64,000 nt of DNA from positions 3,348,001 through 3,412,000 of the forward strand of contig JBLDXI010000024.1 of the NCBI GenBank assembly GCA_047495785.1, in the 5' to 3' direction. Source of the stretch: Lepidodermella squamata (Eukaryota > Animalia > Gastrotricha). The notes under the pieces were generated by a model. That model ran no database searches and was not told where the DNA came from. It saw only the letters and a program-made list of their open reading frames with translations. Positions 9,001 to 38,511 of the stretch are shown here, one piece after another. The position numbers were made by a program, and so were the translations under genes. Numbering within the stretch: the first letter of the stretch is position 1; each line of letters begins with the position of its first letter.

Positions 9001-11870
9001 AATTACTTTCACTGTTATGCAATCATTTTCACGAAAAAGACTGAATGCGTGGTTATATCCATTTTTCAAACAAATTCATCATATTTGGCACTTGGTCGAG
9101 AAGAAATATCACATAATCAGCTTGACTGAGGTCTATGCATGCCTATAGCACCTCGCTTCAAGCTTGCTATGAAAAAAATCCGAATTTTGCAAATTTTTCC
9201 GAGAAAAAGTAAAAATAATTTGAAAGCTTGAAAAATAGTATTTAAATCCGACACTTCTAACTAGCGGATCAAAATTGATGTATTCGCGGCGATGGCTATT
9301 CCAATATTATTAAAATAATTTAGGGAGCATTATCTAATAGAAATTTAGAAATTTAAATTTAGGCTCATGTTCATGTATAAAGGAACGGTCAACGAAAACC
9401 ACGAAAATCATGAGAAAATCTCGAAACAATCAATATATTCTGATTTTATTTTTATTTTTTTCAGTATATTTTTTCTTGTTTTTTTACAGTACCTACCGGG
9501 TGGCTGGAAACTGCCCCAGTGGCGCGATTCGTTGCATACTGTATATCTACTAATTTTCGGTGGTCATGGTTTGATCTTCGAATTCGGTGTTTTTGCAAAA
9601 ATATCGAAATTAAAATAACCGAATATTAATTCTAATTAAAAAAAATCGATTTTTTCTTAACAGCCAGCCAAAAACCGAATTAAAATCCACCGAAATTTAA
9701 TGTACAGGCACACATTCTCCAAAACCGAAAATTAATGACCACCGAAAATTAGTAGATATACACTAATTCTTTTCAGGAGGATTTTGGCAACATTTAAGAT
9801 TTTTTATGATTGCGAAATCGATTTTTCATCGATTTTCATTTCAATTTTTCCAGAAAGATAATTTTATATATCACGTTCCAGCCAAAAATGTGATTGCGAA
9901 ATCGCGATTACTTGATACCTCAAAATTTGAGTTTTAAATCACCTTGCTTTGACTTTTAACAGCGCCCATAAAATTTGCACTCAAAAATAATAACAGCGCT
10001 CACTCGAGTTTAAGTAAAAATTATGACGCAACAACCGAAGTAATTAACATCGATAATTACGAAGTAGCTCGTGTAAATGCATAGAGATGATAGAGTGCTC
10101 ACTCGCAGAGTTGCGTTTTTTATGGTGTCCGCGGGCTAATTATGACAATTAAGATCAGATGACACACATAACTTAGCTTATGCTTTTCAAAGCAATCGTT
10201 AAACTTTAAATTCAGAAATATTGAACTACGGATTTTTTGACAAGTTTGGATTCGAAATAATCGCTAATTGACAGTTAAAATTGAGAATTTTCGGTAATTT
10301 TCGAAAAATTTCAAAAAATCAATATTTTCATTTCAAAATTTTCAAAATTTGTAGCGATCAAAATATGGCGTCCCCAGATCTAAGTCAGGTATCAAAATGA
10401 TCGTCTCGACCTGGTGAACGAAATGGCTCCAAAACATCCTTCAATTTCACCTTGTTTTCAGGTGTTAAGTACCTGGAAAGAGAAATGCGATTTTCTCAAT
10501 TTTACTTCTCGGCCACCTATCAACTAGTTCTGAAAAGATTTCTGGACCAAATTTGGTACCAAAAAATCCGCCGTCTTTCAAAGTTTAAATGACCCGACGC
10601 CCAGTTTCGGCCCCAGCAATCGAAGCGAGACGTCGAGCGATAAGGGCAATCGATCGAATTGTAATTAGTTCAGTTTCTTCCCCCAGGACAATGAGTTAAT
10701 CCCCTGCCATCTGGTGCCCATAGCGTTCCACCCTCTTGACTGCGAGTGAGCACTCTATCATCTCTATGTGTAAATGCGACGCATGTCATTATTTTTCATC
10801 CCAATATTTCTTGTGCTATTTCTCAAATTTAGAGCAGATGTCGCCAGTTCATCAGCTAAATTTAATGAAGCTTTTCCTCGTGGTAGCGTTTCGGAAACTG
10901 CGCTAAACACTACTTAGTGATCATAAAAACTTGAACTAAGCCTGAAACTAAACCTGAAAAAACTGTGACTTACAGCTGCAATATTTTCCATATCTCGTGC
11001 TTGTGCATTGACAGTACTGTCCAGCAACACACGTTCCTCCGTTTTCGCAGTTGATATCAGTTCTGCCTTGATCACAGAATGGCACTTCAAAAAGGCTTAT
11101 TGCATGAGCCAGAAAAATAACATAGAAGTGAAGCTTACGTATTTCACAATAACGACCAGTGTAGTACGGTTGGCATGTGCAAGCAGTTTTTGTGCAAGTA
11201 CCACCGTTCCGGCATTTGGGATAATCGTCCAGATTGGAATTAGAATTATCGTCGCAAATAACATTAGCGAAGCCATCTTAAAAGAAATAATTATGTATCC
11301 TTCATGGTGCAGAATAATTTCGCATTTGAGCTCCTTCAAAATATGAATTAGACTGCACCTGGCAATCGCGAAACCCTTGATCATTCAAAAGTCGAAGAGA
11401 TCAGATTTCTCGTCTGATTTAGCCCGTTCGTCGCCCAATACTTATAATTAGACAGAAAAATGTGCCTGGTAGTATATGCGTTCACGAAATACTTTATATC
11501 AGCTTAAAGAGCTTCCTTTTGTAGCCTGCAAATTTTGATATGGACTTAATCGCTTACTTGCAGCTTGCACTATAGAACCGGCGTGGTTTCTATGGATATA
11601 TTTCTAAGGCATTTAAATACATAGTGTGAACTAACCGTTCTTGCATTTTATGCCATAGTTTGGAGCTCTGCAAAAGCAGCGGCGCCAGCCATTCCCACCC
11701 ACGCATGTGCCACCGTTCGCGCATTCGGGATCATTTTCGCAGACATCGCCGTTGTCGCTGTCTTAAACATCTCATGGAGGAAAGCAATTCAGAAGATGTT
11801 AAAGTTTACTTGCAGGAGGAGTCGATTCAACCAAAAAGATGAACAAGACGATTTTAACAGACAGCTTCAT
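1..11870 (-). CDS. Giant secreted mosaic lectin, copy A (5' part: signal peptide, ~12 EGF, ~10 CTLDs, start of first F5/8C); multi-exon, 3' end beyond the left window edge
   Basis: ATG at 11870 opens [20 protein letters not shown] followed by a gtaaac donor. EGF exons lie at ~11635-11765, ~10975-11277 and ~7050-8615. CTLD exons include ORFs 6303-6983, 5738-6334, 4425-5420, 3204-4193 and 146-508. Collinear with copies B and C; window position 1 aligns to 20682 in copy B. Confidence 0.85.
9539..9763. mobile_element. Tc1/mariner-pogo-type MITE
   Basis: 28-bp perfect inverted repeat TGTATATCTACTAATTTTCGGTGGTCAT / ATGACCACCGAAAATTAGTAGATATACA, flanked by TA on both sides. Confidence 0.75.
10080..10768. 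mobile_element. Non-autonomous DNA transposon with 8-bp TSD (P-superfamily-like termini)
   Basis: Perfect 28-bp TIR CATAGAGATGATAGAGTGCTCACTCGCA and a perfect 8-bp TSD TGTAAATG at 10072-10079 and 10769-10776. The CATAG terminus fits the CANRG pattern of P-like elements. Confidence 0.85.
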
Positions 11871-12045
11871 CTGACACGTATTGCATGTATAGGCTCAAGC
11901 CTTGATGAAACGACAATGAAAATACTCGAAACTCGAGCGACTCAAAAGTAATAGAATGCTATCGGCAATATCATTTTAGTAAGCGGCACCTAGATGGAAA
12001 CTTTTTTAAGATACTTCGATGCAAGGCGAAACAGCTATTGTTAGG

Positions 12046-12075
12046 AAATATTTACATTCGTCCCAAGGATACGGC
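12046..12075 (-). promoter_or_regulatory. Conserved upstream motif of copy A (forkhead-like site + CAAGGATACGGC)
   Basis: AAATATTTAC-N8-CAAGGATACGGC, with identical spacing at 31021-31050 and 55927-55956, 164-176 nt upstream of each ATG. Confidence 0.5.
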
Positions 12076-12400
12076 TTGTCGGGTCACCGATCGGCGTGAA
12101 AGTCAACCTTAAACAATGCAAGGCGTGGCATAATTAATTGATCTCGCGTTTATTTTTATCCAAAAAAGTATTGGAAATGCGCATTCACAAATGACGTCTA
12201 GTCCGTTGATACTCGTACAAAAGTACGCATGCCTTGACAATTCAAATACAGCTTCACAGGAATAAGTCGAAATGAATGTGACTGTAAGTTCGAATTCATG
12301 ATTCGCTCAATGTGCCCAATCCATCCTGTGCGTTATCAATGAACTTGATGAAGAGGTAAAACCTGATGATATGATAACATTTAATCTAAAAAGCGCTAAA

Positions 12401-12816
12401 CACTTTAACTGCCAAAAATATCCTGTGAGATCCGATATTGGGATGCAAATCTTGGAGCTGTCAAATTTTCTCTAATTAAAGTTGAAAGACGCGTCGCAGG
12501 GCAAAACTCTTTTGACGGGGAAATGTAGGCCATGTCTCAGAGAAATCAGACTACAGAATTGGACCCAATTATTAGACCCAGATTGTGGCGCAACAATCGA
12601 AAACTCACATTCTTTCAAATTGATTCGTGTGTAATCCATGATGTTTTGAGCCATGAATTTGCTGTCGCCAGAATCCCTGAGACATGACCAACATTTCCCC
12701 GTCAAAAGAGTTTTGCCCTGCGACGCGTCTTTCAACTTTAATTAGAGAAAATTTGACAGCTCCAAGATTTGCATCCCAATATCGGATCTCACAGCATATT
12801 ATTGGCAGTTACAGTG
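12401..12816. mobile_element. Fold-back MITE with long TIRs, piggyBac-like ends
   Basis: Near-perfect inverted repeat of ~125-140 bp (CACTTTAACTGCC...GGAAATGT / ACATTTCC...GGCAGTTACAGTG), flanked by TAAA on the left and TTAA on the right. Confidence 0.85.
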
Positions 12817-13675
12817 TTAATACCACGGAGGCCAATAGGGGCGATGGTGTGACAACGAAATCGAACTTCCCACAACTGCTGATTAAACGCATTTGAAACA
12901 TTTTATTATGAATGATTGATTTGTAATTCATTGTTTCACCAAGATCACAAGTTTTACAATTACAACTCTGGAAACAGACAGCGAGCGTTAACCAGTTTGC
13001 TTTATCGTTATTGACGATAGGAACGGTTTGATCACGTGAGTCAATATCGAGCAAGGCAAGAAAATTTCCGAGCATCGTTGGCATATAGCTTTCGTTTTTG
13101 CCTGAAGGCATGATAATGGGTTGGCTTGCTGGCTGCACAAGCCACTTTTGAATAATTGATAGATAGGAGGTGCACGTGTCAAGCTCCCTGCTATGGTGAA
13201 TGATCAATAATTCATGCTTGCAAACTTTACTAAACGTTACACTTTTTGGTGAGCCAGGTCATGCCAAAAACCGATATACGATTTATAGGTGAAGGTTTTG
13301 TCAATTTTATTTGATCGTTTTGACACGAATAAAAGTCGGTCAAGTGCAATTTGCCAAAACAACATTTCTCTCTTATAGGAGTTCGCCTGAGCGATGGTAA
13401 AACAGAATCAATATGTTTTTTTCGAACTGGATATCAAGACCTATTAGCCGATGCTGCTGCGGCGGATGATGACGAACACTTTTATCGAGTCATAGCACAG
13501 AACCTACTAAACCTGGAAAAAATTGAATGCCTAAGATCAAGAAATTACCAATAACTTACATATCGCATATCGCCACTCATATCCGCTTTGTTCGTGATTT
13601 GCGGTAGAAATAGTTACTAGTAACTTATTAGATGGGTTCCGATAGCGTGAAACAAAATACGAAAAAAACCCAAAA

Positions 13676-13744
13676 GCGGCTCGTCGGTGTCACTTTGAAT
13701 GTGACTCCAGGGAGCACCACGAGGAGGTCAGCCGCAAGTTCCCC
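13676..13744 (-). ncRNA. HDV-like self-cleaving ribozyme fold downstream of the copy B stop codon
   Basis: The minus strand reads GGGGAAC-UU-GCGGCUG-ACC-UCCUCGU-GGU-GCUCCCU-GG-A-GUCAC-AUUCAAA-GUGAC-A-CCGA-C-G-AGCCGC. This gives P1 (G1.U wobble, one A-C mismatch), P2, P3, L3 UCCUCG, P1.1 CC/GG, a P4 hairpin and J4/2 CNRA. Confidence 0.85.
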
Positions 13745-13817
13745 ATAACAAAAATAAAGCGCAAATTATTTTGGAAGCTACCGCAGAATGAATAAACACA
13801 GTACAGTGGTGCATTTT

Positions 13818-16800
13818 TTACAACATGACTGGACTGGCTGCGAATATCACGGGCGAAGTTACCGTTAATCAGCCTTTTAACTTACAAGTACATTTCGACG
13901 GTAACCATGGCTTGCTCCAGCCAGTGTAATTCAGCACTCCCCATGTTTTGTTGGCTTTTAAATTTCAAGCATAATTTAAATTTAGGAAAACAAGTGAATA
14001 CTTACCAACACATGCAATAACAACCTGGCTGTCCCATGATAACGGGTCCAGAGTCTCGATGTCATAACATTCGTATGTGAAATTAGTAGCAAATTCATAG
14101 ATCGCATTTGCCGTAGCCGGAACTACGCCAGATATTTTGACATTGGGATAAATCGGCGGACTGTCGCAATTCAAGGGGATACAAACACCAGGTGTTTTCG
14201 GCTCCCACTGCTGGCTATCGCCGCAGTAGATAGTTTTCGATTTAACATAACTATCACCGTCTTTGAAAGTGTAACCGCGGACACAAGTGTACTCCCAGGT
14301 TGTGTGCGCCCTGTTCTGAACATCATAAGGCAGTGGATCAGGAATGGTGAAATTATTCCATGAATAATCCACAACAGGAGGCATAGGACATCGCGTGGAT
14401 TTGCAGATGATTTCTTCGCCGGTCCAGTTACCGTAAGGCTTGGCGCAGATTCGAACAGGCAAACCGGTTGAAACCATCATGAAGTCATCGGCGCATTGAT
14501 AGAAGAGAGTCATGGTCCCTGCCGAAACTTCGACATTTGGCAGACGAACAGCGCTGCTGTTTGATAAATCGGGATACATACCACACAGTGTCCGGCAATC
14601 CAGCCAATCACCGACCCATCTTTGTGTGCCGCTGTCGCACGTCAGAACAGTAGTATCACCCTGCCACTTTGAGTTTGTGAAACCAGGAAAACAAGTGTAA
14701 TTCACTGAGATCTTCGAAGTGAAGTCCGAGGTGACAATCTCTTGCGAAGTTCCTGTCATAGTGGGCGGAGGTCCACATTGACCTGGGAAATAACCGCAGT
14801 CGTCCATTCTGAAATACGTATCAGTTCCTGTTTCGGGGTCTCCCTCACCCGGGACGCATGTGTCATTTCTTATTTTGCAGTCACCTTGGCTGGAGCTTTT
14901 CAGGGTGAAAACTGCTGTTTTACATATCCAGCTACCATACGCTGTGCAATAACTAGTGCATTCGGTTGCAGTAACTTGCTTGGTAACCGTGTAAGAAATG
15001 CCCTCGTCACAATTGAAATTTGCAATTTTCACGTATCTCCCAGGTTTGGTAGGTCGCCGGACTTTCATGGATGTCCATGATAAATTCGGATCATAGCCGT
15101 TTTTGAATGTGTACCAATACATTTGGGCACTCTCAGGGGATTGCTTGCCATAAATAGCGTTAAGATTGGATGTCTCGGCAGTTGAACTAGACGAGACGCA
15201 TGGGGTAGGTTGGTCGAACCACCAGCCGCCACACAGGTCGAAAATGAAGAAATTTCCATTCAGCGCTTTGAGGGAGTCACCGGCAGTGGAACAAGCCTGG
15301 TAGTTCGCTATGTTCAGTGTGTAGGCATCACTCTCGGTGTAGAAAAGCTTATAATAAGCAAAAGCGTATTCATTTCCGGATCGCATTTCAACCAGCAGCT
15401 CGAAATTAGCAGCGGCCGTCAGGCCTTTGATAAGTCTGTTGCCCATCCAGTAATTGCTAGCAATCGAACCAATCTGATAATCATAACCAGCCAAGTCAAG
15501 CATGAACGTTGTCGTGTCATCAACACGCCGTTGGATTTGGGTCCATCCTCCACCGAAAGTCTCCATATCGCAAAAAGCGTTGAAGGTAATTGGCGACCCA
15601 GCTCCATTTTCTGCAACCATGTCGCTGAAAGTTTGCGACAGATAGCGGCTAGTTATTGGCAGATTGGCTTGCTTCCAAGTGCAGTCATTTGGCACAGAGT
15701 AAGCTTCAAATTCGAGAATGAATTAACTCAAGTTAATTGATGATTTATAGATGAAAATCTTACGTTTGCAAACAAGATCACTTCCAGAATATACTCCGCT
15801 GCGATCGGTCAGCATTAATCTGTTGCGATCACCGGAAATTTGTCTGAAGGCATGATTGCACTTGTGGCTGTAGGTTGCCTTTCTCCAGTGACAAACTTGG
15901 GAAGTTGAAGCCTTAGGGCGATACGGGGTATCGGCAACTTTCGGTTTTATCGCCATTTGTGTAGCTAAACATGACTTGTCCCAGCCCGTTAATGGCGACC
16001 AGTTAAGACCATAACCCCAATTCGTACTGCCCCAATTTGCTGAATTGAGGTTAGCCCACATCCGGCAACCAGGGTTGTTATCAGGCCACGCCCAGCTACC
16101 ATCAATTGGAGGGTACCACCAAGCACCAAAATATTTAGTGTCATGCCAGTTCATGCAAGCCTTCATGGACCCTCTATCAGGTGTTTGGAAAGGTTGGTCG
16201 TTGTGATGCCACACGTCGAATGCATCGCCTGCATATAGGTTACTCGGCGTTGATGAGTCATAATTCTTCAGCTTGATTCGATAATCTTGCTTTTCGGAGT
16301 ATATTTTAACGTCATCATAATAGGCGTATTTCCATTGTGAGTCGATGGGACTTTTGCAACCCACAAGGAGGGCGTACGGCGCTGACATTGTCAAACGGCT
16401 GACTACGTCAAGCCCAAGCCAATAATCTCCATTCAACCCCTTTGTTGGGCTCGAGAAACCTCTTTTATAGTCGTCCCAGCCTCGCCAGAAGTCTGTCTCG
16501 CCATCAGTTCGTCTCTGAATGACAGTCCAACCTGTGCCTCGATTGGGATAATCTGTCGAATTATAGTTGGTTGAGTAATCGCAGTACGCTTGGAATTCAG
16601 TGCCGTCAGATAGCGTCAAAGTACTGACACCAGAGTTGCTGGCAGCCGTAAGGCAGTCTCTATTCCTCATTCGACGCTTGATAGCGATTTGGGTTGCTGC
16701 CATGGAGACTTTATCCTTTCCTAGAGTATACCAGTTTACTCCAACGTAACTACGAGGATCGCCGAAAAAGCCGTTCAAGTCAGCTCTCGTCTGGGAGCAA

Positions 16801-19800
16801 TCTGTTGGCAGCCACCAAGGACCTTGGTTATTCGTAATGATACAACTTTGACTTTGACCCTTGTCAAAAGTGGAAAATGGTTGATAATTCGACGTCCCCA
16901 TAGATTCTCCGGCCGCTTGCTTCAGATCTGTTTGCCAGTCAAACCCTTCAACTGCGATTGCGTAACCATCTTGTTCACTCAACAAGTAAAACTCGTTATA
17001 GTAGGCATAGTATGTCTGATTATCAACAGGATTCTGTAGTGATATCAGAGCTGAGTAAGCTTGAGACTTGGTCAACTGGTAGACAGTTTCCAGACCCAGC
17101 CAAAAGTCGCCATTCAATCCATCTGGGCCCGAAAAGCCGTTTCTATATTCGCCGTAGCTTCTGTTGAAAAGTACATCGAAATTCGTTCGCCTCTGGATGA
17201 CGATCCAACCCAAGCCTGCCGATTTACTTTTCGAAGTGTAGTAAGTCGTCATATCGCAGTAGACCTGAGTTGGCTTCATCCCGTAGGGATAGATGTAGTA
17301 AATTCCATCGTCTGCCATGCCCTGTCCCAGCATATCGACGCAATCGATTGGTTTGGGCCCACGTCTTCTGACCATCATGGTTGCGGACTTCAGGCTTTCA
17401 TATCGACCTTTCCAAGGGGCCCAGTATAAGCCACCTTCCCAAGTGTTGACGTCATAGAGGCCGTTCAGATTGCTCTCGCAACATTTCCCATTATCCCAAT
17501 AGCCGCCATGCCACCACCATCCTGTACTCTTGGAGGCTGAACAGCTGGAAGCAGCTACGTCTTTCGTTCTGAATGGCTGCCAGTTGTGCACACTCAGCCC
17601 GTCTCCAGCCACTTCCATCGCATCGTTCTCTGAATTGTAGCCATAGACAAGAAGTTCGTAACTCGTGTTGCTATGCAGCCAAAACGCGTCATATCTCGCA
17701 GTTCGCTTCTCGCCGTTGTAGTCCTCGAGAACAACAGCCAGTTCGTAAGGAATCCGAGTGTACTCAATGTTGGTCATGGCCCAGATCCATTTGTTTCCCA
17801 AGTAGTAGGCGCCGTTGGGTGAGCCGAAACCTCGAATGTAAGTGGTGAAGTTCTGTTCGAAGCTCACGCTTGGGTCGTTGTATCGACGTTGGATAACTGT
17901 CCATCCACCCTCGAGGGCATTCATCTCACAATATGCTGTGAAACTATCCCCGGTAACAGTATACAGCGTATAAGCTGAGCTCGCAGCACTGGGGTTGGCT
18001 TCTCTGATGTCCAAACAGTCACTTGGATAAGGAAACTGGGGTCGCAATTCTAAAAAGTAAACCATGACATAGCTGATACTTCTATGGCAAGGATCTTACG
18101 CTGCATCAAGAATGGCAAGGGAGATCGTCTAATCATCATCTTTGTTGACTTCATGCTTTCCCAGAAGCCCCGCCAAGTTGCCCACGTGATCATCGATCCC
18201 TCAGTTTTGGCAGAAGCCATTCCGTTTAGGTTGGCCGAAGTGCAGTCTTTCACTTCACTAGCTGGCTTGTACCACCAACCTCCAAATCCTCCTTTCGCAC
18301 AGCCGAATGAGGTCGCACTTCCTGTATCGTTGTCGTAAGTATAGAATCGCTGGTTGTTCGCCTTGGGTAGGAACGAGTCATAAGCAGAGCAGTCGTAACC
18401 AGCCACGTGCAGGGTAAAGCCGCCTGATTCAGGATCGATGTAAAAATCTCTGTAATAAGCCATTTGCTCCACATCATCGATCGAGGTTAGCACGATGATC
18501 ATGTCATAACGGTTCATTGAGGTCGTGATAGTGTTGATGTAATTGTTACCTAGCCAATAGTTGATCCCCAGCTCACCAAACCCGGAGCGATAATCATCCC
18601 ATTTTTGATAGAAACTTCTTTGTGCGTCTAATCGCTGCTGAAAAACTGTCCAGCCTCCGCCGTAGCTGTTCATATCGCAGAACACTGAAATCGGAGCTTT
18701 CGAGCCTGGAGGGTAAATGTTGTAGATTCCATCGGTGAGAGCGGGCTGGCGTAATGCATGGTCTTCGCAATCTACCTGTAGCATTGACCATTGATCTGAG
18801 CAAGAGCTAAGGTAATACCGAGATTCATAGAGTTACTTATCATACCGCAATGAGGCCAAGGGTTTTCTTGATAACCAACTCCAAATGAAGTGGAATAGCC
18901 AACAGGGCACAAGCATTGGCACCCTTTCTCGTACGTACAGCAAGTAGAGCAAGGAGCATGAGGTGGACAACCGTAGACTTTGAAAAAGGATTCGGCCTGA
19001 GGTCCTATGAACGTAACCGGCACAATTCTCAAAGTCTTTGTCCTTATGTTTGGGCAGAAATTCGTTGTAGCATAAAAGGACAAGCTGCGAGCTCCAGGGA
19101 AAACCTTGACACCTGATACAGGATTGGCTTGTTGATTGAGTATCGGGTAAAATAATCTGTCATTTGTCTTTTCAACCAAGAACCACAGCGAGTAAGACGT
19201 GACAAGTCGATCTACGCTCGATCTACTTCTTCCCTTGACTGCTAGAGAGGAAATCGACGTAGATTTTCCAAAATTTATCTGAAAAAATTGACGGCCATCG
19301 TTTAGTGGTGCCGGGGTATAGAAGATGGCGGCATTTTCGACGCTATCGAAGCTGACCCAATCGGTTGGGCCATTTGAAACGCTCAATGATCCGCCCCATT
19401 TCGTCAAGGCCTCTGGAAGCAACTCGTTGTTACAAACTATGTTTAGGATAGGAGATTTAGGAATGTTCGTATCACTGGTGAATATACCTGGCGGTTGAGC
19501 GTCAATGTAGTAGTTTTTTCCCGATGCAATTGTGGAGCAAGATGTACCGGTCCATCTACGGTAGAAATGAAATGAGTTCAGGGTTATCGAGAACCAAACC
19601 CTACTTACCCCACCGGGCAATTACAAGAGCAAATGCCTATCGAGTCACAGCAATCGAAACCTTAACAAAACGATTTGATACATTGGTCATCGACTACATT
19701 AAAATTCACATCTTTTCCCCTTTGCTGAGCAACCGAATATGTCAATAACCATCGTTGGCTTGGTATTGTAGTCGACAGGTATGATTTTCATAGCTTTGAG

Positions 19801-22800
19801 CTTCATTGGAGGACAGAATGTCTGTAGTGTGGGAGCGGTCGCATTCATTGGACCAATGAAAAGCCTCGGAGACTGGTCGATTCCGGTGTAGTAGTTAAAA
19901 GTATACTCGTAGCCTGTATGCGACCATTGAACATAATAGGTTTTGATCCATTCGCCATTCTTTGTTGGATCATTGCTGCCAGTCATGACGAGGCCTGTGA
20001 CAACTTTCAAAATGGCAAACTCGATTTTCCAGAAAGATCGACCGTCGTCATAGGTTCGTGGTGACCAGCCTTTAATTGGGGTATTTCTATCTCCTTGTGC
20101 TAAACCGTTCGCATCATCGGGGGATCCACTGTCAGCAGTTATCTGATGGGTAATGTAAGGATAATAGCTAGCCCCATCAAACAGCTCATGCCAACAGTCG
20201 CACAAGCTGGTAACTGGAAATTTTAAACAAAAATAGAGATAGCATTGAGTGAATAAAGATTCGGATTACATTTGGCGGTGCTAGCGCAACCTTTGATATC
20301 CGCACGAAGGAAAGGCTTCACAGCATAGGACAGGATCCACAATGTTAATTCAGCAGCTTGAAGCCTAGGGCATATTTCTTGAGAGTTTCGAGTTGATTCA
20401 GCGCCATTTCCAGCAAAAATAATCGGTGCCAATTTTGTCCAAAACGCGGTTGATTTGTGAAGATGAACATGAAGTTCTTTGGAGCCAGGTAAGGCGCGAT
20501 AGCTGACGATGTAGTGCAGTATGCGCCCTGAACCGCCGGAAAGTCCCTCAGTTCCGATGGATCGGACGAAGATAGGGCCATTAGAAAACTTGAACCTAAC
20601 CCATGCAGGATCACCAGGGGTGTTAGCGGCAGACAGGTCAGGACACCATCCCAAGTTAGTCTGGGCCAGGTTAGACGGAGGATATGACCCAGTGCCATCA
20701 GTGTAAACGGAACTGGCTTCGTAACCATTCACTCCAACGTAGGAGCTGGAAAGCACGCTGTCAGCACAGGCTGATGAATAAGTGCCAGCTGGGGAAAGCA
20801 ACATTTGGAAGCATGCGCGTTGCAATCAAAAACATTATTTAACAAACTCTTTGTGCACTTGATAGTGGGCGGCAGTGCTGCTTTTTCGCAAAGAGCGATA
20901 TCACTATTCTGCATATCGATATCATTCATGCCGATACCGCAATCCCACCAGAAATTGCCAACGATTTCATAGTTTCCGGCAAAATCAGGTTGCCCTTGTA
21001 GCCAATTCAGATAAACAGTATCGTTCATCCGAGTACCGTCGTCCATTTCCCAAAATTCCGGCTTCTCCGGAAAATCGTACATCTTCAAAAGCGACATTCC
21101 AACATAGACCGGATCGCGCCAGTGCGTCAAGTATCTAGCGAATTTGGCCTCCATGGGATAGTTTGTTGCTACCAGGTACGAGTTCATGAATTCACATTGC
21201 TGCCGGGCACTGCGAAACTTATGACCACCGACAGTTCCAATTTTTTTGTAACACTGTCCATTGAAAAAGTTCTGAAATAAAATTGAAAATTACTTACGCC
21301 CTAATTCGCAACACAAGAATCAACAATACCCAGCCTATTTCACACTCCAAACAGGGTAAAGGTCGCTCGCAGATGAAAAACGCATTGATTGCGTTAGTGT
21401 CCACGGTAGTCCTGACTCTAACAGAAGTACTGTTCCAGTAAAGATAGGCCCACTTATGGGTGTTTTGAGGGGAGCCGTCGGCCCAAAATGTCGAATCATT
21501 TGCTGCACCAAAAACGCCATTAGGGAAGGGTGCGTTATTATCAAGATCCCAATCTGTTTCGCAATAATAAAATGTTCAATATAAAAAGGTAAATATCTCT
21601 ACTTTCATCTGGATCGCCGACTTGAGAGATGGCAGCTGAATCAGGCGTCCGCCTCATCCGAAGACTGTTGTCCAGGCCAACCCAGATTGCAGAACCCGTC
21701 ATCATACTGCTGCTCGAGTTGATAAATGCAACGAGCTGAGCGAACGCTTTGGCATCAGTTATCGATACCAAATTGAAAGTGTTGAAGGCGTCGTAGCAAT
21801 AGCCTCGAGCGTCGAAAGGGCTTGTTTTTGTGACAGAACTAATTTCCAAAAATGACTTTAAGACGCATTGATCGAGCAACAAAAGCCTTACGTGACAAGC
21901 TTGTAGCAGGTCGATCCGACTGATGTGAAGCCTTCAGGGCAAAGATCTGAGCAAGCGGCAGCCGAAGGCACCGTGCAAACAGGGATTGACAGGTCTTGAC
22001 AATTACGGGTGTAGATGTACTGATTATTGTTAATCCGAGTGCATGGTTGGTACCAATTGTTACTCCACGGCAGAGATGCTAGCCTGTTGTTTGGATAACT
22101 TTCCCATGTCGATGGCTCGCCCTCCCATTCGTAAGCCGCTAGCGAGAAAAACGACTTCTTACAAAATATTGAGGCTTGAGTTATGACCTCTCACTTTTGT
22201 TTCTGAGAACCAAATCGAGCCAGAACCCCTCCTGTTGCAGTTCGTTCATTGCTCGAGTCATCACTTGGGTCTCGTAACGCTGCAACAGCGTCAATGGCCG
22301 CAGTCCAGCTGCCTGGCATTTGCTCACCATTTTAGGCCTATCAGCCGTATCACTGAATAGCCAAACGCATTTATTAGGTGCGACTCGATAGCCAGCATTG
22401 AGCTTCGTGAGACCAGAATCGTCAGACGGCACTTGGCACTCTGAAAATTTCACGTGTGATAGGCTCGAATATTATCACAGGGTGTGTCAAAGAAACGCAA
22501 CCGAATTGGGTTGAAAAGGCGAGAATTTGTATGCATGCACGATTTCCGATCCCAAGTTTCCTAGTCTATGTAGTCTGAACAGTGGGAACGCTAGCCAATG
22601 ACTGTACTATTTATGTAAAATGATTCATGCAAAAAAGGCAAACACTTTTTGACCTAAACACCGGATCAACGAGTAAACGGCAATTCGAAAATTTTGTCAA
22701 CGTAAAATTGCATGAAATTGTTTCCTAATTTATGAGGAAATTTTGTAAATCAGTCAGTTATAAATTCTTACCTAGGCAAGTTGTCGGTGTATTTGCATAC

Positions 22801-25800
22801 TCGCAAATGAAACGAAATTTCGTCGACGTGTCGAATGATGTTATGTTACCAGCTGGTCCACTGGTAACAGTTCTTGAATTATTGCAGAATGGAATAAGTA
22901 AGTTGTCAGCTTTTGACAGAAGTGCTCCATAGCAATCTGGCGTTGTTGGCCAAGATGAGTCTCCGATTATTGATTCTGCATAAGACGTCATTTAAGGATA
23001 ATTATGGTACTGCCAATAACTTACTGCTCAAAGCTTGCGTAGCATTGCCCGCCGAGTTTGGCCATGCCCAAATACCATAAGAATCTGAAAGAATTGCTAC
23101 GAATTGCTGCGAAACTAATTTCTAGCTGAAAGCCTTACTTAGAGATAGAGAAGTCCAGTAGTAAGGATCGACGGCTTTGGCATGGTTTATCAAGGTTTGT
23201 ACTTTATCCGCAGTGTCTGGTGAGACAAGATAGGCTCCCATTTTCGAGCATTTCCAACTTGCATCATCCCAGGTAGCCCTTAATCCGATTATTATATGTA
23301 TTTTTGAATGGAGTGGGTAATAGGTAATAGTAATCTCACGTTTCATTGGAGAAATAGACGCAGGTATCGGATTTTGTCGAAGGATCCGAGTATCTTATGA
23401 AGGGGCATTTGCAACATCCATCCTATTGAAAATTATGAACAAATAAGATGGTTACTACCGGGCGTCAAAAATATACAAATCAGGATTTTATTGATATAAC
23501 ACTCGCAGTTCATTCATATCTAGATTTTACGCATTCGGTTTGATCGTCTCCACCAAGATGCGCATCGTTTCGATTTGCAAAGACTCAGATATGGATGAAA
23601 TACTCGTCAGATTTCATAAAATTATAGATTTCAAGAGCGTAGATCGGGAAAGTTAACTTACATTGACACAGTCGGGGGTTGCTTGAGTTGTTACTGTTAA
23701 GGTAGCGCCATTGCCGTACAAACCAGACTTCTGGCACAGTACTCTAGCATTGTGGTAAATATTATTGGTCCACCACATGTCGTCCATGTGATCCAACGCC
23801 CCTGAGTATACGACGTCGACTGACGGCCAAAACATGAATGCATACATATATACACTCAAATTGTCATCTGGATGAACATCTAGGGCATCACTGGCTACCA
23901 GGTAGTTACCGCCCAGCCACATCCACGCTGATGCATACACGACCAACCCAGTGAAATATGCGTTACCAGTCGACAACATGTTATTGTGATTTGCCGCAAC
24001 GCGCAGCCACATTAAAGCAGTCTCGGTATTGGCGAGAAACAGATCAGTTGATGCACCTTTGCACCAAGTACGGCCATTTATTATACCTGTCGGATCCCAT
24101 CCAGGATTCTGGTAACACATTTTACCCCACTTATACCAGCCAGCACCCGTAGGACAGAACCAACACGCAGAGTTTACTTCGCATATGTACCGAGCTGAAC
24201 TGTTGAACATGTTGCTACCGACAGGAATGTACCATTGAGAGCGAGACTTGCTGTAAGCCAGGTAGGCAACAAAGTTGTTGGACCCGTCGCTATACGCAGT
24301 AGGGCGTGTTTGCCATATGAGGTAACTCCACGGGGACGGAGAGGGCGCAAATTGATTGGTGGAGATGTCGGTATTCACAATTGGCCCAGTGCCATCTGAC
24401 CAGTACCATTTGCCATCTGGATCTCCGGTATAGCTATTAGAGTAAGTATAGTAATTGGGTGCAGGCATCTTGCGAGCTCGGCGAGCCCAGTCTTGCAAGC
24501 CAATGAAGTAGAATCTGTCAACATTCAAATTCTGCACACCACCATTCATGATGAACTTGTATTCATCCACTGAGTTGAAATTAACAAAGGAAGCTCCGTT
24601 AGCAAGCTTGAATAACAACGGACTTTAAATAAACTAACACGACGTAAAATGAGTTAGTAACTTACGCAAGTTTTCAGGGCATTCATGTAGGTTGTTGAAG
24701 AACTGCAACGAAAATTCAACTTACGTTAATTGTTATTACTAAGGGAAGTCTTACGGAGCCACCCAGTAACAAGCATCATAGCACTCGGAATAGACATAGC
24801 CAGTCGGACAAGTGGCTAAAAATGGCAATCGTTGCACACAGCTCACACAGCTATAAGAACTTACGTGTAGTTGGGCACTTTGAGAATGAGCACGTCTGTT
24901 GGTAACCAAAGGTTCCCGACATCTGACATACCGCTTTGGCCGTGTCTGTGCTTGAAGCCGTCGTCCATTGAGAAGCTGACTGATCGCTAATCCCCGTAAA
25001 GCTGTTCGACTTGCTGATGGAGGTGACCATATAGGCATAAGGCGCTGATCCTGAAGACGAAGCCAAGTCAAAGGAATCAGAACTTGACACGCCGGATCCA
25101 TCAGACCATTCGTAACCTCCTCCGCTAGCTGTTTCAAGCCCGATCCAAATCTTCGTTCCGCTGGACAGCAAACCAGATTGAGCCGTTATCATTCTAACAT
25201 ACATTGTTGTCATTTCAGTTTTGGGATACCACAAGTCAACATTGGCATCGAGGTTTGCACAGACAGCTTTTTTAGCATCATAAGTGCCCTCATCATCATT
25301 TGTGAGCCCTCTGAAGCAGTAAGTGCCGAACTTGGACCACCCAGTCGGACAAATAGTACATGCCGAGTTGTACTCACAAACGTACGCAGCTTGGTAGTTG
25401 AAGTTGTTATCACTCCCAACAGGCAAGTACCACACAGAGTTTCTTGTATCCCATCGCAAGAATGTGATGTAAGGGGCACTGTTCTTGTCACCGGAGATTG
25501 TTGGCTGCTTTTCCCATATCAGAAAGTCGTAGGGATCGGCGCCAGAAACGAAAGTTCCAGCGATTGAATCGTATGAAATTGGTTTTTCTGGAATAGTATC
25601 ATCCTGCCAGGTCCAAATTCCATCGGCATCGCCCGTGTAGCCATTGATCCCGATGGCTAGATTGCCACTAGACCGGCGAACCCAGTCACCCAGACCGATG
25701 AACCAATCCTTTTTCTTATCCAATAATGTTGTTACGTATCTGAACTCGCTGCTAGTATTTAGGTTCACTAGTGTGGAGCTTGCTTTTACCTTATTTCAAA

Positions 25801-28800
25801 GAGCTGAACGTGAACGAATTCTAGCAACGATATGCTTCAACTCACGCAATCAGCAAGTGCGTCCATGTAGCTCGCCGCAGTACTGTCAATAGAATAAGAA
25901 GATAGCCCGAATTCCTATACGAAAAGACAGCTAAAAGCTAAACCTTACCTGACAACTTTGTAACAGGAGTCGAAACATGCCGAGTACGTGAAACCATCCG
26001 GGCAAGTTGCTGTCATGAAATTACTTACCAACTTTAGAAGAAAACAAAGCGGGAGAACTTACGAGTAATTGGACACTTTTTGTAACAGGCGTACTGCGTA
26101 GCAGCCGCTGATGGGATAACATCGCCTTCGCATGCGATTTTCTGCGATGTTTATTTTTATAGATATCCCGCTGATTTACAAAGTCATACATTTCCGCTAT
26201 TCGAACACGGAGAATCATGCCAGCCGTCGAACATCATAGCAGCACATTGGCTACCGGACTGATCATTAGGCTCTAGCCCACCAGCAAGTCTCCAGTTCGC
26301 ATGGTAAGGGCTCGCCATGACCTTGCCAGCTGTGTCCCAATAGTAATCAGCTAAGAATTTTTAATTGTATTATTGATTGAACACGCAGAAATGAGCTTAC
26401 AATCGAGGTGGTTATATCCGATCCAAGCTTGGTAATTCCAAATTCGCCACAAATTGTCGAAACCTCCATTTCCAGTGTTATAGTTAACATCAAGCCCCCA
26501 AGCCCAGTAGAAAGGCTCGAACTGTTGCCTGATAGTAGCTAGGAAACCATTCTTTGCCTGGCAAATCTGTTCAGCTTTCAGCCGGTTCACATAATCATTC
26601 CCCCAGTTTCCGCCTGTTGAAACACCCGTCGAGTAGCATCTGTCGAAAATTCTCATGTTTTCGATCTTATTCCGGCTTGTGCCAGGTTTGCAAACGGGCA
26701 TTGTCGAACACGGATTCCGAATCATGCAAACCATCGGCTGGTAACTCCACCAGTAGTCGTATGTCCGCAACATAGGCCGCTTTTTGTGCTAATGAAGTCA
26801 GATTAGATGTGCTATAATTATAATCATCAATCCGGTATCTTACCGGAATCATGCAGATGAACTCAAGGTCATAACGAGGCTCGCCGCTGTACCACAAGGT
26901 GCTATCGACTTCAACGGGGGGATAAGTTTGCCAGTACCATTTGTTAATCGAATGGTCCCGATAACCACCAATCAATAGGCAAAGGTCATTCCATACGTCT
27001 ACGCTCTTGTCTACAGGCTTCTTGTCCAACTGAATATTCAGCTCGGTCGCTAGCCATTTCACGAAGTTACCCATTTTAGCCTGAGGGTCGCCCGACTCGA
27101 ACGTTGCCAGCGTAGCGCCGGCATGAGTACAGGAAGCATAAGCGTACATTGGCCGAGTTGTGTAGTCATTAAAATTCCACGATGACGGCGTGTTTACAAC
27201 AAAGTAGCAGTTGTTATCCTGCAGAAAAGTTCCACAAGGGCAGCAGTTGTCTACAGTTTGTGCTGGAAGATTACAAAATTATCAAATAATCCTAGTTCCA
27301 GCTAAAATGTCAAAATACGGGCTGATGTGAATCCGGACGGATAGGCACTAGGGTCAAGGCTGAATTTTTTATAAACACTGTCGGCCGTCCAGGTTTTCGC
27401 GTTCTGACTTGTGAACGTTTGATGACCAGCGTAGGAGTTTGTATCAGCTAGAAAATTGAATGGCATTATCACATTTTTGAACCTTGAAAGAAGTTGATAC
27501 TAACGAATAGTGCAGTCGTTTCCCGTCCAGCCATTAGGGCAGTGGCATCTTTGGGTTATGATGAATAATCACGAGCTTTAAGTTAAAATCAAGCTTACTG
27601 ATTTCCTCCGGCGACTAAGCACCAGCCACCTGGAATATTATTGCCGTAAACAACCGATGAATATTTATATATGATCAATGATCAAATACCGTTAGAACAG
27701 GCCGGGTGGCAGACAGCTGGTATAAAAAATAAGTCACGCTATTTCTATTGATTTTTCTGTCTACTTACCTGTCTCGCAACGTGTCCCTCGCCAGAAGTAC
27801 GGATTGCAAGTACATTGGCTGAAAAGTTGGATTCTAGCTAAACTAGTCAAAACTACACATGGGACCTACTTTGGACCTGAACAGTTGCCTCCGTTATAGC
27901 ACCAATCATCTTGGCAGTACCCTTAGACGCGAAAATGTTATTTTTCCGTGCTATCTGTTAAACTTAGGTTTACTGACATTGATCACATGCGTCGCCTTTC
28001 CACAGAAAGTCGCAAGTACAGTTGTTGAGAGCTATGCAAGTGCCATGGCTGTTGCATTCGTTCGAAGACGGACAGGCGGCCAATTTGCAGCTGGGGCCTT
28101 TCCACCCAAATGAACACTGGCAAACCTCAGGATTAACACAAGTTCCCCCATTAGCGCAACCAGTCGAGCAAACAGCTGTAATACTCAAATATATTCGTGT
28201 GAGACATTGCAAAACTAGGCTAAGTACGTGTTTGGCATTGTGCGCCAGACCATCCAGTCGGGCATTTGCATTTGTTCGGCGCGGTACAGTTGCCTCCATT
28301 TTGGCACGATGGATTGCAAACAGCTGTCGAATGTTCGAGATTATTCATGCTATCAATAGGGCAAGGATCAAACTAACGTGTCGTGCATAGTGTACCGTTC
28401 CACTTTGACGTATCACAGGTGCATACGTTAGGTAAGCTACATGTGCCACTATTCTGGCAGCTTGGATTGCAAACAGCTAAAATTCAGGCGATTTGACGCT
28501 GAACTTGATTTTTAAATGTATATACCTACCGATATCACACACAGTTCCGTTGTAGCCTGATTGGCAGGTGCACTTATTCGGAGCGGTACAATTTCCATTT
28601 ACGCACGCAGGGCTACAGATCGCTATGAATGGAACCTATCCTAGGACAATACTTCGAATTTTACTGAAATATTACGTGTGTTACAGGTCGGCCCGGTATA
28701 ATTGCCTGTACACTGGCATGTATTTAGCGCAATGCATGTCCCGCCATTGTTGCATGTTGGTACGCACGTGGCTGAAAAACGCAGTGATTTTTGCGATTGT

Positions 28801-30856
28801 TTAAAAATTCAATTGGTAAAACTCACGAGCTGGTGTTGTAGGTATAGCTGTGGTAATCAAATTTATATAAATAACTTTCGAGAAAAGAAGGTATTCCTTA
28901 CATGTCTCGCAGTTGCGGCCAGTATAACCAGAGGCGCATGCGCATACCTTGTTAGCGCCAGTCCCGCCGCAAGTGCCACCATTTAGACACGGGGGCAATC
29001 CATCGTTTGCCGGAGTGCCATCGTCGCAGACAGAACTGACACCGGATGCTTCACAAACAAAATTAAAGCAAACAATTTAACCCATCGTTACATTACTTGT
29101 GGAATTACTCGCTGTGGAAAATTGAATACATTTCTTCTTGGGCTGAGGACAGAGGACGATGGTTGGATCCTAATTGTTTTGGAAATACTTAATTTACTTC
29201 AAACCTGAAGAAAACCTTGGCCAACTAAAACGCGATTTTCCGGGGTTGGCACACGGGCAATTAACACTTTAATTTAATTTTTTTGAAACTTTAAGTTTTC
29301 AGAGACCTTAATAATTCAAAAAGTTGGTTAATTCATGTTTTGCTGTTGCTTCCTGCTCTCGGTTCCTCGTAGAATTAAAAGTTTTTCAGTAATGCTTTTA
29401 GGCACCCACGTTGCGATTAATTAGGACATACCGCTGCAGTATTTTCCATATCTCGTGCTAGTGCATAGACAGTACTGTCCAGCGACACAGGTTCCTCCGT
29501 TTTCGCAGTTGATATCGGTTCTGTTTTGATCACAGAAAGGCACTTCAAAAAAGCTTATTGCAAGAGCCAGGAAAATAACATCGAAGTGAAGCTTACTTAT
29601 TTCACAATAACGACCAGTGTAGTACGGTTGGCATGTGCAAGCAGTTTTTGTGCAAGTACCACCGTTCCGGCATTTGGGATAATCGTCCAGATTGGAATTA
29701 GAATTATCGTCGCAAATAACATTAGCGAAGCCAACTTGAAAGAAATAATCATGTATCTTTCATGGTGCAGAATAATTTAGTATTTGAGCTCCTTCAAAAT
29801 ATGAATTCAAATGCACCTGGCAATCGCGAAATCCACGGTCATTCAAAAGTCGAAGAAACAGAAAGGTAACCACCCATTACCACTGTCGGCCTTCGGCCTT
29901 TGACAGTTGACGGGGAAACTTCCCGTTTTTTACGCGTACGCTCATATTCTCCTCGACGTACGCACCGAACGAACGACCGAACGACTGAACACGGGCGACG
30001 ACAACGGGGAGTTTCCCCGTCATAACAGTTGTGCCGTCGTTACATATGTAACCGACAGTACCAGCTGTTAAAATGCGGATATTTAAGCCTTAAATAATTG
30101 TCACTGAATCGAATTTCAAGTGCATGCATCAATGCGAGACAATAAATCACATAATCACATAATAAATCACATAGCTAACAAAGGTATTGTTAGTCACCTC
30201 AAATCCAGTTGCAATTTGCAATTTTTATAAAGCCTGGGTTCAACTAACCGTTGTCGCATAGTACGCCGTAGCTGGGACTTGGGCAAAAGCAGCGTTTGTT
30301 AGATGATCCCCTGCAATTGCCTCCATTGCAATCGTTATCATGGTTGCACGTATCTCCCCCGCCTTGAACATTAAAAGGACAATATAAACTTCCAGTAAAT
30401 AACCAAGGTGAACTCTTCATAGTCAGGTTTTTCCATCGCCAATCGGTGAATTCTAGGGCTTATCTTAGTGGGCTGGAAAGGTTGAAAACTCTATTGCAGG
30501 TGTTGGATACAAGCTAAAACGTAGCAAGCCAGCAAAGTCCACATTTTGAAGTTTGACATGTGATAGACTGTCTGAAAATGTCATTTTTATACAACTTTCG
30601 CCCAACCGAATACAAATTTCACGGCTTTCAAAGGTTGCTCGACGCGACTGGGCTCAATACTTATAACTCATTATAACTTAAGTCATTAGCTACTAGTGCG
30701 AAAATTCCACGAATAGACCGCTTCGGACCAATTCCGATTGGCGATTGAAAAGCCGTGGTAAAATTGTACAGGACCCGCCGTATAACAAAGCTTACTTGCT
30801 AGAGGCGCCGATATAACCAAAAACAGGGCGCAAATCAATCCCCAAGAAGTCTTCAT
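13818..30856 (-). CDS. Giant secreted mosaic lectin, copy B: SP-EGFx~12-CTLDx~10-F5/8Cx3-FReDx5-PAN-CCPx4 (multi-exon)
   Basis: ATG at 30856 (MKTSWGLICALFLVISAPLA|gtaag), then a chain of ORF fragments joined by mostly ~45-60 nt GT-AG introns. The last exons read ANKTWGVLNYTGWSKPWLPSKCT|SSPVML-TAA (stop 13818-13820). No internal signal peptide or TM segment was seen. The single-gene model is inferred. Confidence 0.8.
13965..15695 (-). CDS. Copy B large exon: FReD5 + PAN/apple + 4 Sushi/CCP modules
   Basis: FReD motifs FCDMETFGGGWTQIQRR, YWMGN, GGWWF and NLNAIY. PAN-like CxxxC motif (TECTSYCTAYGSWICK). Four C-x-x-P...Y-x-C...C...W...C sushi units. Confidence 0.85.
   Translation of the reverse strand: MPNDCTWKQANLPITSRYLSQTFSDMVAENGAGSPITFNAFCDMETFGGGWTQIQRRVDDTTTFMLDLAGYDYQIGSIASNYWMGNRLIKGLTAAANFELLVEMRSGNEYAFAYYKLFYTESDAYTLNIANYQACSTAGDSLKALNGNFFIFDLCGGWWFDQPTPCVSSSSTAETSNLNAIYGKQSPESAQMYWYTFKNGYDPNLSWTSMKVRRPTKPGRYVKIANFNCDEGISYTVTKQVTATECTSYCTAYGSWICKTAVFTLKSSSQGDCKIRNDTCVPGEGDPETGTDTYFRMDDCGYFPGQCGPPPTMTGTSQEIVTSDFTSKISVNYTCFPGFTNSKWQGDTTVLTCDSGTQRWVGDWLDCRTLCGMYPDLSNSSAVRLPNVEVSAGTMTLFYQCADDFMMVSTGLPVRICAKPYGNWTGEEIICKSTRCPMPPVVDYSWNNFTIPDPLPYDVQNRAHTTWEYTCVRGYTFKDGDSYVKSKTIYCGDSQQWEPKTPGVCIPLNCDSPPIYPNVKISGVVPATANAIYEFATNFTYECYDIETLDPLSWDSQVVIACVGKYSLVFLNLNYA
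15723..18784 (-). CDS. Copy B exons encoding four tandem fibrinogen-related domains (FReD1-4)
   Basis: The repeated motif set (Y/F)CDM...GWT(V/I)xQ(R/Q)R...F...W..Y..GF...YWLG...WW...C...NLNG...M occurs once in the 244-aa ORF and three times in the 780-aa ORF. Confidence 0.9.
18840..20790 (-). CDS. Copy B exons encoding three F5/8 type C (discoidin) domains with Cys-rich linkers
   Basis: Three repeats of the pattern ASS...W(C/S)P...W/F...(T/K)xG...Y.V.Y/WS...FxG...(L/I)xP/L...R/xDIxGC in ORFs 20223-20825, 19699-20205 and 18772-19620. Confidence 0.8.
20845..27265 (-). CDS. Copy B exons encoding ~10 C-type lectin-like domains
   Basis: Repeated CPxGW...CY...C...L...W(I/V)GL...W.DG...(Y/F)(I/V)CE patterns. 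EPN...WHD occurs in the second domain and QPD...MND in the last. Confidence 0.85.
29865..30023. mobile_element. Short Helentron/DINE-like element interrupting an EGF exon of copy B
   Basis: Inverted repeats TGACGGGGAAACTTCCCGTT / AACGGGGAGTTTCCCCGTCA, a terminal hairpin ACTGTC-GGCCTTCGGCC-TTT-GACAGT and internal GAAC micro-repeats. Absent from copies A and C. Confidence 0.55.
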
Positions 30857-31020
30857 CCGCTTTTTTAGTTCACACGCTCATGCAATTAATTTGTCATAAA
30901 AGCAATTTATCTGTACTGAGCGAATGAAAGGTGGATGAATATTTTTGCAACGCTCAACTTATTGAAACCCAGTTATTAAGAAATGTTTGCCGTTAAACAA
31001 AGGAGCTCAATATTGTTTGA

Positions 31021-38378: not shown

Positions 38379-38448
38379 GCGGCTCATCGGTATCACTTTG
38401 AATGTGATTCCAGGGAGCACCACGAGGAGGTTAGCCGCTAAGCTCCCC
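38379..38448 (-). ncRNA. HDV-like self-cleaving ribozyme fold downstream of the copy C stop codon
   Basis: The minus strand reads GGGGAGC-UUA-GCGGCUA-ACC-UCCUCGU-GGU-GCUCCCU-GG-A-AUCAC-AUUCAAA-GUGAU-A-CCGA-U-G-AGCCGC. P1 is a fully paired 7 bp with G1.U, the nested double pseudoknot is complete, and P2 and P4 covary with copy B. Confidence 0.9.
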
Positions 38449-38511
38449 ATAACAAAAATGAAGCGCAAATTATTTTTGAAGCTACCGCAGAATTAATCCA
38501 GTGGTGCATTT

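What the first reader, a model, noticed from the sequence alone, without database searches (positions are those of the whole stretch)
13676..13744. Second ribozyme copy with two compensatory base-pair changes
Seen in sequence: copy B differs from copy C at few positions, and four of them form two reciprocal pairs. The first pair of P4 is A-U in C and G-C in B, and the P2 pair next to P3 is A-U in C and G-C in B. L3, P3, P1.1 and J4/2 are invariant, while the sequence immediately downstream is unalignable. Copy B also has an A-C mismatch at P1 position 6 and a shorter J1/2 (UU vs UUA). Inference: the fold has been maintained by selection since the duplication, and the P1 mismatch could give B a different cleavage rate, allowing paralogue-specific control.
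Basis: partly seen in the sequence, partly recalled or inferred. Interest (0 to 1): 0.85.

Follow-up and report, generated by a model that had tools for sequence, protein, structure and literature searches.

The report
Self-cutting RNA after unpaired splice donor
Giant lectin genes of a microscopic animal end in a conserved hepatitis-delta-type self-cutting RNA placed about 140 bases after a splice donor that has no consistent partner nearby, so the cut RNA may be half of a message that is spliced onto a separately made second half; this is untested.

Summary
Copy B (13744-13676, minus strand) is a complete HDV-like ribozyme. It differs from copy C by five substitutions and one indel; four form two compensatory pairs (chance about 0.0002-0.004). 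Four homologous genes of another species (about 45% protein identity) carry it with more covariation, so selection on the fold is supported.

The paralogue-specific-rate idea is weakened. In an independent DNA run, B has G at P1 position 6, so the A-C mismatch is not fixed.

Across six genes the cut lies 124-148 nt after a conserved phase-1 splice donor ending the last sushi exon. No acceptor, stop codon or AATAAA is consistently present in that spacer, and no retroelement follows. Best reading (0.45): a poly(A)-independent 5' half-transcript for trans-splicing, as in Drosophila mod(mdg4) or Giardia split introns, but ended by a ribozyme. Main rival (0.30): an atypical mRNA 3' end. No RNA data or partner half were found.

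The scan found this ribozyme before, on copy C of this window and on other lectin genes of this genome; the short notes I could see read it as lying after a stop codon or the coding end.

The parts
13676..13744 (-). HDV-like ribozyme, copy B; predicted cleavage between 13745 and 13744; presumed catalytic C 13687; bulged G 13682 in P2; P1 position 6 (13739) is A here and G in run X1
13745..13788 (-). 44-nt U-rich block just before the cut; 2 differences between B and C, also aligned in the third copy
13789..13879 (-). Variable middle of the spacer. It holds the weak candidate acceptor (+48) and a 6-codon mini-exon with stop; 8 of 20 nt differ from C and it does not align in the third copy
13880..13885 (-). 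Terminal phase-1 5' splice site GTAAGT, 141 nt before the cut; a GT donor sits at the same codon position in all six genes
13886..13954 (-). Last coding exon of gene B (end of the last sushi-like module)
14006..15703 (-). Penultimate exon of gene B (fibrinogen C, PAN-like and sushi domains); query for the homologue search
13886..30856 (-). Host gene B: signal peptide, EGF, C-type lectin, discoidin-like, four fibrinogen C and sushi modules; roughly 4,000 codons in an unvalidated model
38379..38448 (-). HDV-like ribozyme, copy C
38449..38584 (-). Terminal donor (38584) and 136-nt spacer of gene C
38585..55763 (-). Host gene C, paralogue of B
11868..11877 (-). Start of the next tandem copy (A): own signal-peptide ATG at 11870, directly preceded by an acceptor-like CAG, so gene B does not simply continue here

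Best explanation
A host-domesticated HDV-like ribozyme ends the transcription unit of each giant lectin gene inside what is formally its last intron. Steps: (1) the gene is transcribed through the last sushi exon, a phase-1 5' splice site and a spacer of about 140 nt (shown in sequence); (2) the ribozyme folds and cuts 5' of G1, leaving the upstream RNA with a 2',3'-cyclic phosphate and no poly(A) signal (fold and absence of AATAAA shown; cleavage inferred from established HDV chemistry); (3) the released RNA carries an unpaired donor and is joined to a separately made 3' half with a phase-1 acceptor, most simply by spliceosomal trans-splicing, possibly by RtcB ligation followed by splicing (inferred); (4) the likeliest partner is the EGF-stalk and channel part of the polycystin-1-like receptors of this genome, which according to other scan notes follow the same fibrinogen/PAN/sushi head (not tested here).
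For: A GT donor sits at the same codon position in 6 genes of two species about 45% identical in protein, while the neighbouring introns are at different positions in the two species. Donor scores are 7.6, 7.6, 9.0, 3.2, 6.4, 4.5 against a real-donor median near 7.8; background GT reaches 4 in 7.8% and 6 in 2.2%. Donor-to-cut distance is 141, 136, 148, 138, 147, 124 nt, while distance to a stop ranges from 5 nt to none. The best acceptor at normal intron length scores 3.0, 4.2, 0.9, -4.1, 9.0 and none, against a real median of 7.6, 10th percentile 4.0 and background median 1.3. Using each gene's best acceptor gives no stop before the cut in 5 of 6; L001 has no stop before the cut unspliced or with any acceptor at 35 nt or more, in three sequences. 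AATAAA is within about 90 nt of the stop in 6 of 7 neighbouring ORFs and in 0 of 6 spacers. Unrelated genes follow about 45 nt (convergent, L001) and about 220 nt (L002) after the ribozyme. Precedents: mod(mdg4) (PMC6237743), Giardia 5' intron halves cut at a motif (PMC3510501), and the synthetic exon-donor-ribozyme design of StitchR (PMC13685140).
Against: No RNA run holds the locus, so no junction was seen. No partner half and no pairing sequence were found in the window or loci, and no scan note of an orphan 3' half came up. L006 has a strong acceptor at normal distance, and B and C have passable ones followed by a stop, which would compete in cis. Five of six genes have an in-frame stop in the unspliced reading. 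Phase 1 is common to almost all extracellular modules, so frame compatibility is not specific. The splice matrices come from predicted introns, some probably wrong. Only two species and six non-independent genes were examined.
Confidence: 0.45

Rival explanations
1. The ribozyme makes the 3' end of a complete mRNA for a secreted lectin. The stop lies in the read-through or in a tiny last exon, and the cut end is either kept without poly(A) or healed and tailed non-canonically. The donor is kept for the short last intron or as a U1 binding site. The cut also stops read-through into the next gene's acceptors.
For: There is no AATAAA in the spacer or within 360-400 nt after B and C. Five of six genes have a stop before the cut if unspliced, and B and C have acceptors at +48 and +53 followed by a stop. 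A conserved U-rich 44-nt block precedes the cut. Each copy has its own signal peptide.
Against: L001 has no stop before the cut. Stop positions (5-164 nt) look like chance. The B/C mini-exon is more diverged than the previous intron and does not align in the third copy. No conserved protective structure was found: z about 0 or positive in 4 of 5 spacers. This reading does not explain why the cut keeps a near-fixed distance from the donor.
Confidence: 0.3
2. An off-switch like the Clec2 hammerhead: the mRNA is polyadenylated downstream of the ribozyme, and cleavage removes the tail and lowers expression unless folding is blocked.
For: AATAAA occurs 68-158 nt after the ribozyme in species-2 genes. 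Precedent in mammalian Clec2 genes (PMC6765202).
Against: No AATAAA lies within 360 nt after B or 400 nt after C. Species-2 flanks are AT-rich with many chance hexamers. The ribozyme is compact and near-perfect, and upstream anti-P1 pairing is no better than shuffles (P 0.06-0.8). The donor is left unexplained.
Confidence: 0.1
3. A CPEB3-like intronic ribozyme: the donor splices in cis across the cut to a distant exon (next tandem copy or a far constant region), with the exon tethered to the polymerase.
For: The donor is phase 1 like the EGF exons of the next copy, 2 kb downstream of B; L006 is also followed by a signal-peptide/EGF gene.
Against: L001 is followed by a convergent gene and L002 by 9 kb of unrelated genes. 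Typical introns here are 41-70 nt. The next copy has its own start.
Confidence: 0.1
4. A relic 5' end of a retrotransposon with no host function.
For: This is the usual setting of HDV-like ribozymes (PMC6765202), and other scan notes report such elements in this genome.
Against: Here the upstream side is conserved and the downstream side is unrelated, the reverse of the retroelement pattern. No reverse-transcriptase ORF follows. Covariation persists across species whose neighbouring non-coding DNA does not align.
Confidence: 0.03

Closest known systems
HDV-like ribozymes (Rfam RF00094 HDV_ribozyme, RF01787 drz-agam-1)
   Same: Nested double pseudoknot, G1.U, 7-nt L3 with U.G, two C-G P1.1 pairs, J4/2 cytosine; the P3/L3 core matches the drz-agam-1 consensus
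   Different: Scores are below both gathering thresholds. It has a bulge in the P2 3' strand and sits at the 3' end of host genes, not at the 5' end of a retroelement
Drosophila mod(mdg4) trans-splicing donor (PMC6237743)
   Same: Transcription unit ends without poly(A) inside the last intron, behind an unpaired 5' splice site
   Different: There the end is made by terminator sequences, one common 5' part serves many 3' exons, and junctions are proven. Here a ribozyme makes the end, the 5' parts are many, and no junction is shown
Giardia split introns with the 12-nt processing motif (PMC3510501)
   Same: The 5' intron half is cut at a defined site downstream of the donor, with unrelated ORFs further on
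   Different: The motif is not a known ribozyme and the halves base-pair; no pairing partner was found here
StitchR ribozyme-activated trans-ligation (synthetic; described in PMC13685140)
   Same: The layout exon - donor - ribozyme leaving a 2',3'-cyclic phosphate
   Different: Engineered; it needs a second RNA with a 5'-OH end and an acceptor, not found here
Mite sDscam trans-splicing (PMC9258826)
   Same: Many variable 5' cassettes of a surface-protein family are spliced to constant exons in trans
   Different: Guided by RNA pairing; the abstract mentions no ribozyme
Mammalian Clec2 3' UTR hammerhead and CPEB3 intronic ribozyme (PMC6765202)
   Same: Host-gene ribozymes; Clec2 is also a lectin gene
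   Different: Clec2 is a discontinuous hammerhead between stop and poly(A) signal; CPEB3 lies in an ordinary cis intron

Membership tests
HDV-like ribozyme | Helices P1, P2, P3, P1.1, P4 in nested double-pseudoknot order | tested here: met
   23 of 24 pairs standard in B, 24 of 24 in C; covariation in 6 sequences
HDV-like ribozyme | G1.U wobble at the cleavage site, L3 U.G, P1.1 | tested here: met
   Invariant in all aligned sequences
HDV-like ribozyme | Catalytic cytosine opening J4/2 | tested here: met
   C at 13687, invariant column; its role is assigned by position
HDV-like ribozyme | Self-cleavage in Mg2+ | not testable with these tools
   Needs an in vitro assay
Rfam RF01787 drz-agam-1 / RF00094 | Score at or above the gathering threshold | tested here: not met
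   14.2 vs 37 bits and 18.8 vs 50 bits
Retrotransposon 5' ribozyme (R2, RTE, L1Tc type) | Conserved downstream element body with RT ORF, variable upstream sequence | tested here: not met
   Downstream is unalignable and upstream is a conserved host gene
Clec2-type 3' UTR off-switch | Cut lies between stop codon and poly(A) signal | tested here: inconclusive
   Stop missing in L001; no AATAAA within 360-400 nt after B and C; present after species-2 copies
CPEB3-type intronic ribozyme | A downstream exon of the same gene in cis | tested here: not met
   Unrelated or separately starting genes follow; very distant exons not excluded
Split-intron 5' half (mod(mdg4), Giardia) | Conserved 5' splice site without a consistent cis acceptor | tested here: met
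   L006 is an exception with a strong local acceptor
Split-intron 5' half (mod(mdg4), Giardia) | Poly(A)-independent transcript end inside that intron | tested here: inconclusive
   Ribozyme present and AATAAA absent in sequence; no RNA ends observed
Split-intron 5' half (mod(mdg4), Giardia) | A partner 3' half, with or without intermolecular pairing | tested here: inconclusive
   None in the window or fetched loci; the rest of the genome was not available
Split-intron 5' half (mod(mdg4), Giardia) | Chimeric junction in RNA | not testable with these tools
   No RNA run holds the locus

The most novel reading that the evidence does not exclude
A natural ribozyme-cut split-gene system: a family of giant lectin 'head' transcripts, each released by its own HDV-like ribozyme behind an unpaired donor, is joined in trans to membrane-anchoring halves (probably polycystin-1-like channels), giving a combinatorial receptor repertoire. 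This would be a natural counterpart of StitchR or of mod(mdg4) trans-splicing.
Probability: 0.35. Interest if true: 0.95.

Novelty: new variant of a known kind. Interest (0 to 1): 0.74.

Why it matters
The biological role of host-gene ribozymes in animals (CPEB3, Clec2, intronic hammerheads) is still unproven according to the review read here (PMC6765202). This is a multi-copy, cross-species conserved case at a fixed place in one gene family, with natural alleles that differ in P1, so it is directly testable. If the trans-splicing reading holds, ribozymes would be part of mRNA assembly and receptor diversification in an animal. If the rival holds, an animal gene family ends its mRNAs with a ribozyme and no poly(A) signal. 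I found neither described in the papers searched.

Tried and rejected
Rfam at gathering threshold found nothing in the window.

A conserved hairpin in the spacer looked plausible by eye but was rejected by shuffle z-scores of 0.06, -0.12, 2.69, 1.52 and -3.30. An upstream anti-P1 element is no better than shuffles. Complementarity of the spacer or its 44-nt block to anything in the window or loci is at chance level. An Sm-site reading of AUUUUUG in B and C was dropped because species 2 does not share it consistently. Completion of a stop codon by poly(A) works only in some frames. A simple hammerhead descriptor found nothing in the window or six loci.

The ten JGI loci with the same core pattern have no lectin gene and are unrelated contexts, so the core alone does not prove homology. 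Viral and bacterial collections gave nothing. Further homologue searches gave no new genes. The organism could not be fixed by protein search. One duplex scan timed out and was rerun smaller.

Database searches used single exons by reference; the joined spliced model was not sent to any search tool and was used only in local scripts.

Full report
Observation. On the minus strand, 13744-13676 folds as a complete HDV-like ribozyme: P1 with the opening G.U, J1/2, P2 with a bulged G in its 3' strand, P3, a 7-nt L3, two C-G P1.1 pairs, P4, and J4/2 starting with C13687. Rfam places it weakly with HDV_ribozyme and drz-agam-1, below threshold. A generic descriptor and the core pattern each find only this copy and copy C (38448-38379) in 64 kb. 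Two reciprocal pairs among five substitutions have a chance of 0.0016-0.004 by position and 0.0002-0.0015 with pairing required. The ribozyme differs at 7% of sites against 29% at fourfold sites of the adjacent exon, and similarity stops at the end of P2.

Setting. The window holds a tandem array of three minus-strand genes (A partial, B, C; unit about 25 kb) for secreted proteins of roughly 4,000 residues with EGF, C-type lectin, fibrinogen C and sushi domains. Many introns are 41-70 nt. Other scan notes identify the genome as probably the gastrotrich Lepidodermella squamata. The published assembly (122 Mb, 157 contigs, 43% GC; PMC11660948) fits the scan's 1993 windows on 147 pieces, but I did not prove the identity.

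Relatives. The penultimate exon found homologues at 45-47% identity in ENA metagenome contigs of an unidentified second animal. Four genes there (L001 with L004 and L017; L002 with L005; L006; L018) carry the ribozyme directly after the same last exon. L018 is cut off in P4 by the contig end and may be an allele or converted paralogue of L006. Over six sequences, 94% of cells pair and 7 of 23 pairs change on both sides, in P1, P2 and P4; partners slid by 1-3 columns give 21-56%. The sequences are few and related, so this is support and not a probability. The P2 bulge stays in place while its base varies.

Independent DNA. Run X1 (contigs, about 60-fold per copy, about 1.7% different from the window over B) shows three single-copy contigs over the site. 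One carries B's flank, one has C's indels, and a third links the same exon to a ribozyme and a new flank; it could be copy A or another paralogue. Summed depth over the core corresponds to about 10-13 copies. All three long contigs have G at P1 position 6. The B contig has 7 differences from the window, 6 of them located outside the compensatory sites, so at most one compensatory site can differ. The A.C mismatch is therefore an allele or an assembly error and not a fixed paralogue feature. L006 has a C.C mismatch at the same position while L018, 99.8% identical upstream, does not.

What the ribozyme is tied to. The constant landmark is not a stop codon but a 5' splice site one base after the last codon of the final sushi-like module. 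It is present in all six genes, scores like real donors, and lies 124-148 nt before the cut. The two neighbouring introns are at different positions in the two species, so this conservation is not general. No acceptor is shared: at normal intron length five of six genes score at or near the 10th percentile of real acceptors or lower, or have none. Taking each gene's best acceptor leaves no stop before the cut in five of six. L001 has no stop before the cut whether unspliced or spliced. The B/C mini-exon is more diverged than the previous intron and does not align in the third copy. No spacer has AATAAA, whereas 6 of 7 neighbouring ORFs have it within about 90 nt of the stop. Unrelated genes follow closely in L001 and L002, and a new copy with its own signal peptide follows in B, C and L006. 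The spacer has no conserved fold, has a pyrimidine-rich end, and is unalignable between L006 and L018 although both flanks are nearly identical. These matrices rest on predicted introns.

Mechanism. Shown: the fold, its conservation, the donor, the near-fixed spacing, and the lack of a shared acceptor, stop or poly(A) signal. Inferred from HDV chemistry: a cut that leaves the gene's RNA with a 2',3'-cyclic phosphate about 140 nt after the donor. Inferred from the layout: this RNA is a 5' half awaiting a 3' half, as in mod(mdg4), where transcription ends without poly(A) in the last common intron (PMC6237743), and in Giardia, where 5' intron halves are cut at a motif (PMC3510501). The same exon-donor-ribozyme layout is used synthetically in StitchR (PMC13685140). 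Other scan notes describe about 30 polycystin-1-like genes whose head of fibrinogen, discoidin, PAN and sushi modules continues into EGF repeats, and spliced-leader trans-splicing in this genome. I could not test either, but they supply a plausible partner and machinery. I give this reading 0.45. An atypical mRNA 3' end gets 0.30, a Clec2-like off-switch 0.10, cis splicing across the cut 0.10 and a retroelement relic 0.03.

Limits. No RNA run holds the 3' 3 kb of gene B, although other notes had RNA for this genome. That fits low expression or missing poly(A) and decides nothing. No partner was found in the DNA at hand. Database searches were made exon by exon by reference; the joined model was used only in local scripts.

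Verdict. This is a real, selected HDV-like ribozyme in a setting I found in no paper searched. It is a member of the HDV-like class by structure, is not a retroelement leader, and works most like the end-forming signal of a split intron. Novelty: new variant of a known kind; interest 0.74.

Noticed in passing
window 15066-19466 vs about 39765-44165: B and C are 94-100% identical over about 4.4 kb in the middle of the coding region but about 75-92% elsewhere, suggesting recent gene conversion or assembly collapse.
   Followed up: no
L006 3374-3520 vs L018 2799-2922: Two genes or alleles 99.8% identical over 2.8 kb, introns included, switch to unrelated sequence exactly at the terminal donor and converge again at the ribozyme. 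The spacer behaves like a swappable cassette or a conversion boundary.
   Followed up: partly
L001 2227-2660 vs L004: No differences across the last exon end, spacer and most of the ribozyme, against 5 in the previous 57-nt intron and 5 in about 15 nt just downstream.
   Followed up: partly
window about 36100-38300: Broken Harbinger/PIF-like DNA transposon after ribozyme C: a Myb/SANT ORF at 36167-36634 (+) and frameshifted DDE_Tnp_4 pieces near 37400-37710 (-).
   Followed up: partly
window 12399-12818: MITE-like element with 145-nt inverted arms, 96% complementary, between ribozyme B and the start of copy A.
   Followed up: no
window 12036-12106, 31011-31085, 55919-55989: A 70-nt non-coding block conserved upstream of the start codons of all three copies; candidate promoter element. 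Intron 1 of B and C also has conserved blocks.
   Followed up: no
L001 2500-2722: A convergent ankyrin-repeat gene stops about 45 nt from the ribozyme's 3' end, so its 3' region lies antisense to the ribozyme.
   Followed up: no
L007 3323, 6852, 10121; L008 (938-960); L009 3697; L010, L012-L015; L011 and L016: JGI metagenome contigs with HDV-like cores in settings unrelated to lectin genes. L007 has three cores on one contig; L009 has a complete-looking ribozyme in GC-rich sequence ahead of an ORF.
   Followed up: no
window 57622-58302 (+) and about 60382-61444 (-): Neighbouring cytochrome b561 ORF and trypsin-like ORFs, with ordinary AATAAA signals about 90 nt after the stop.
   Followed up: partly
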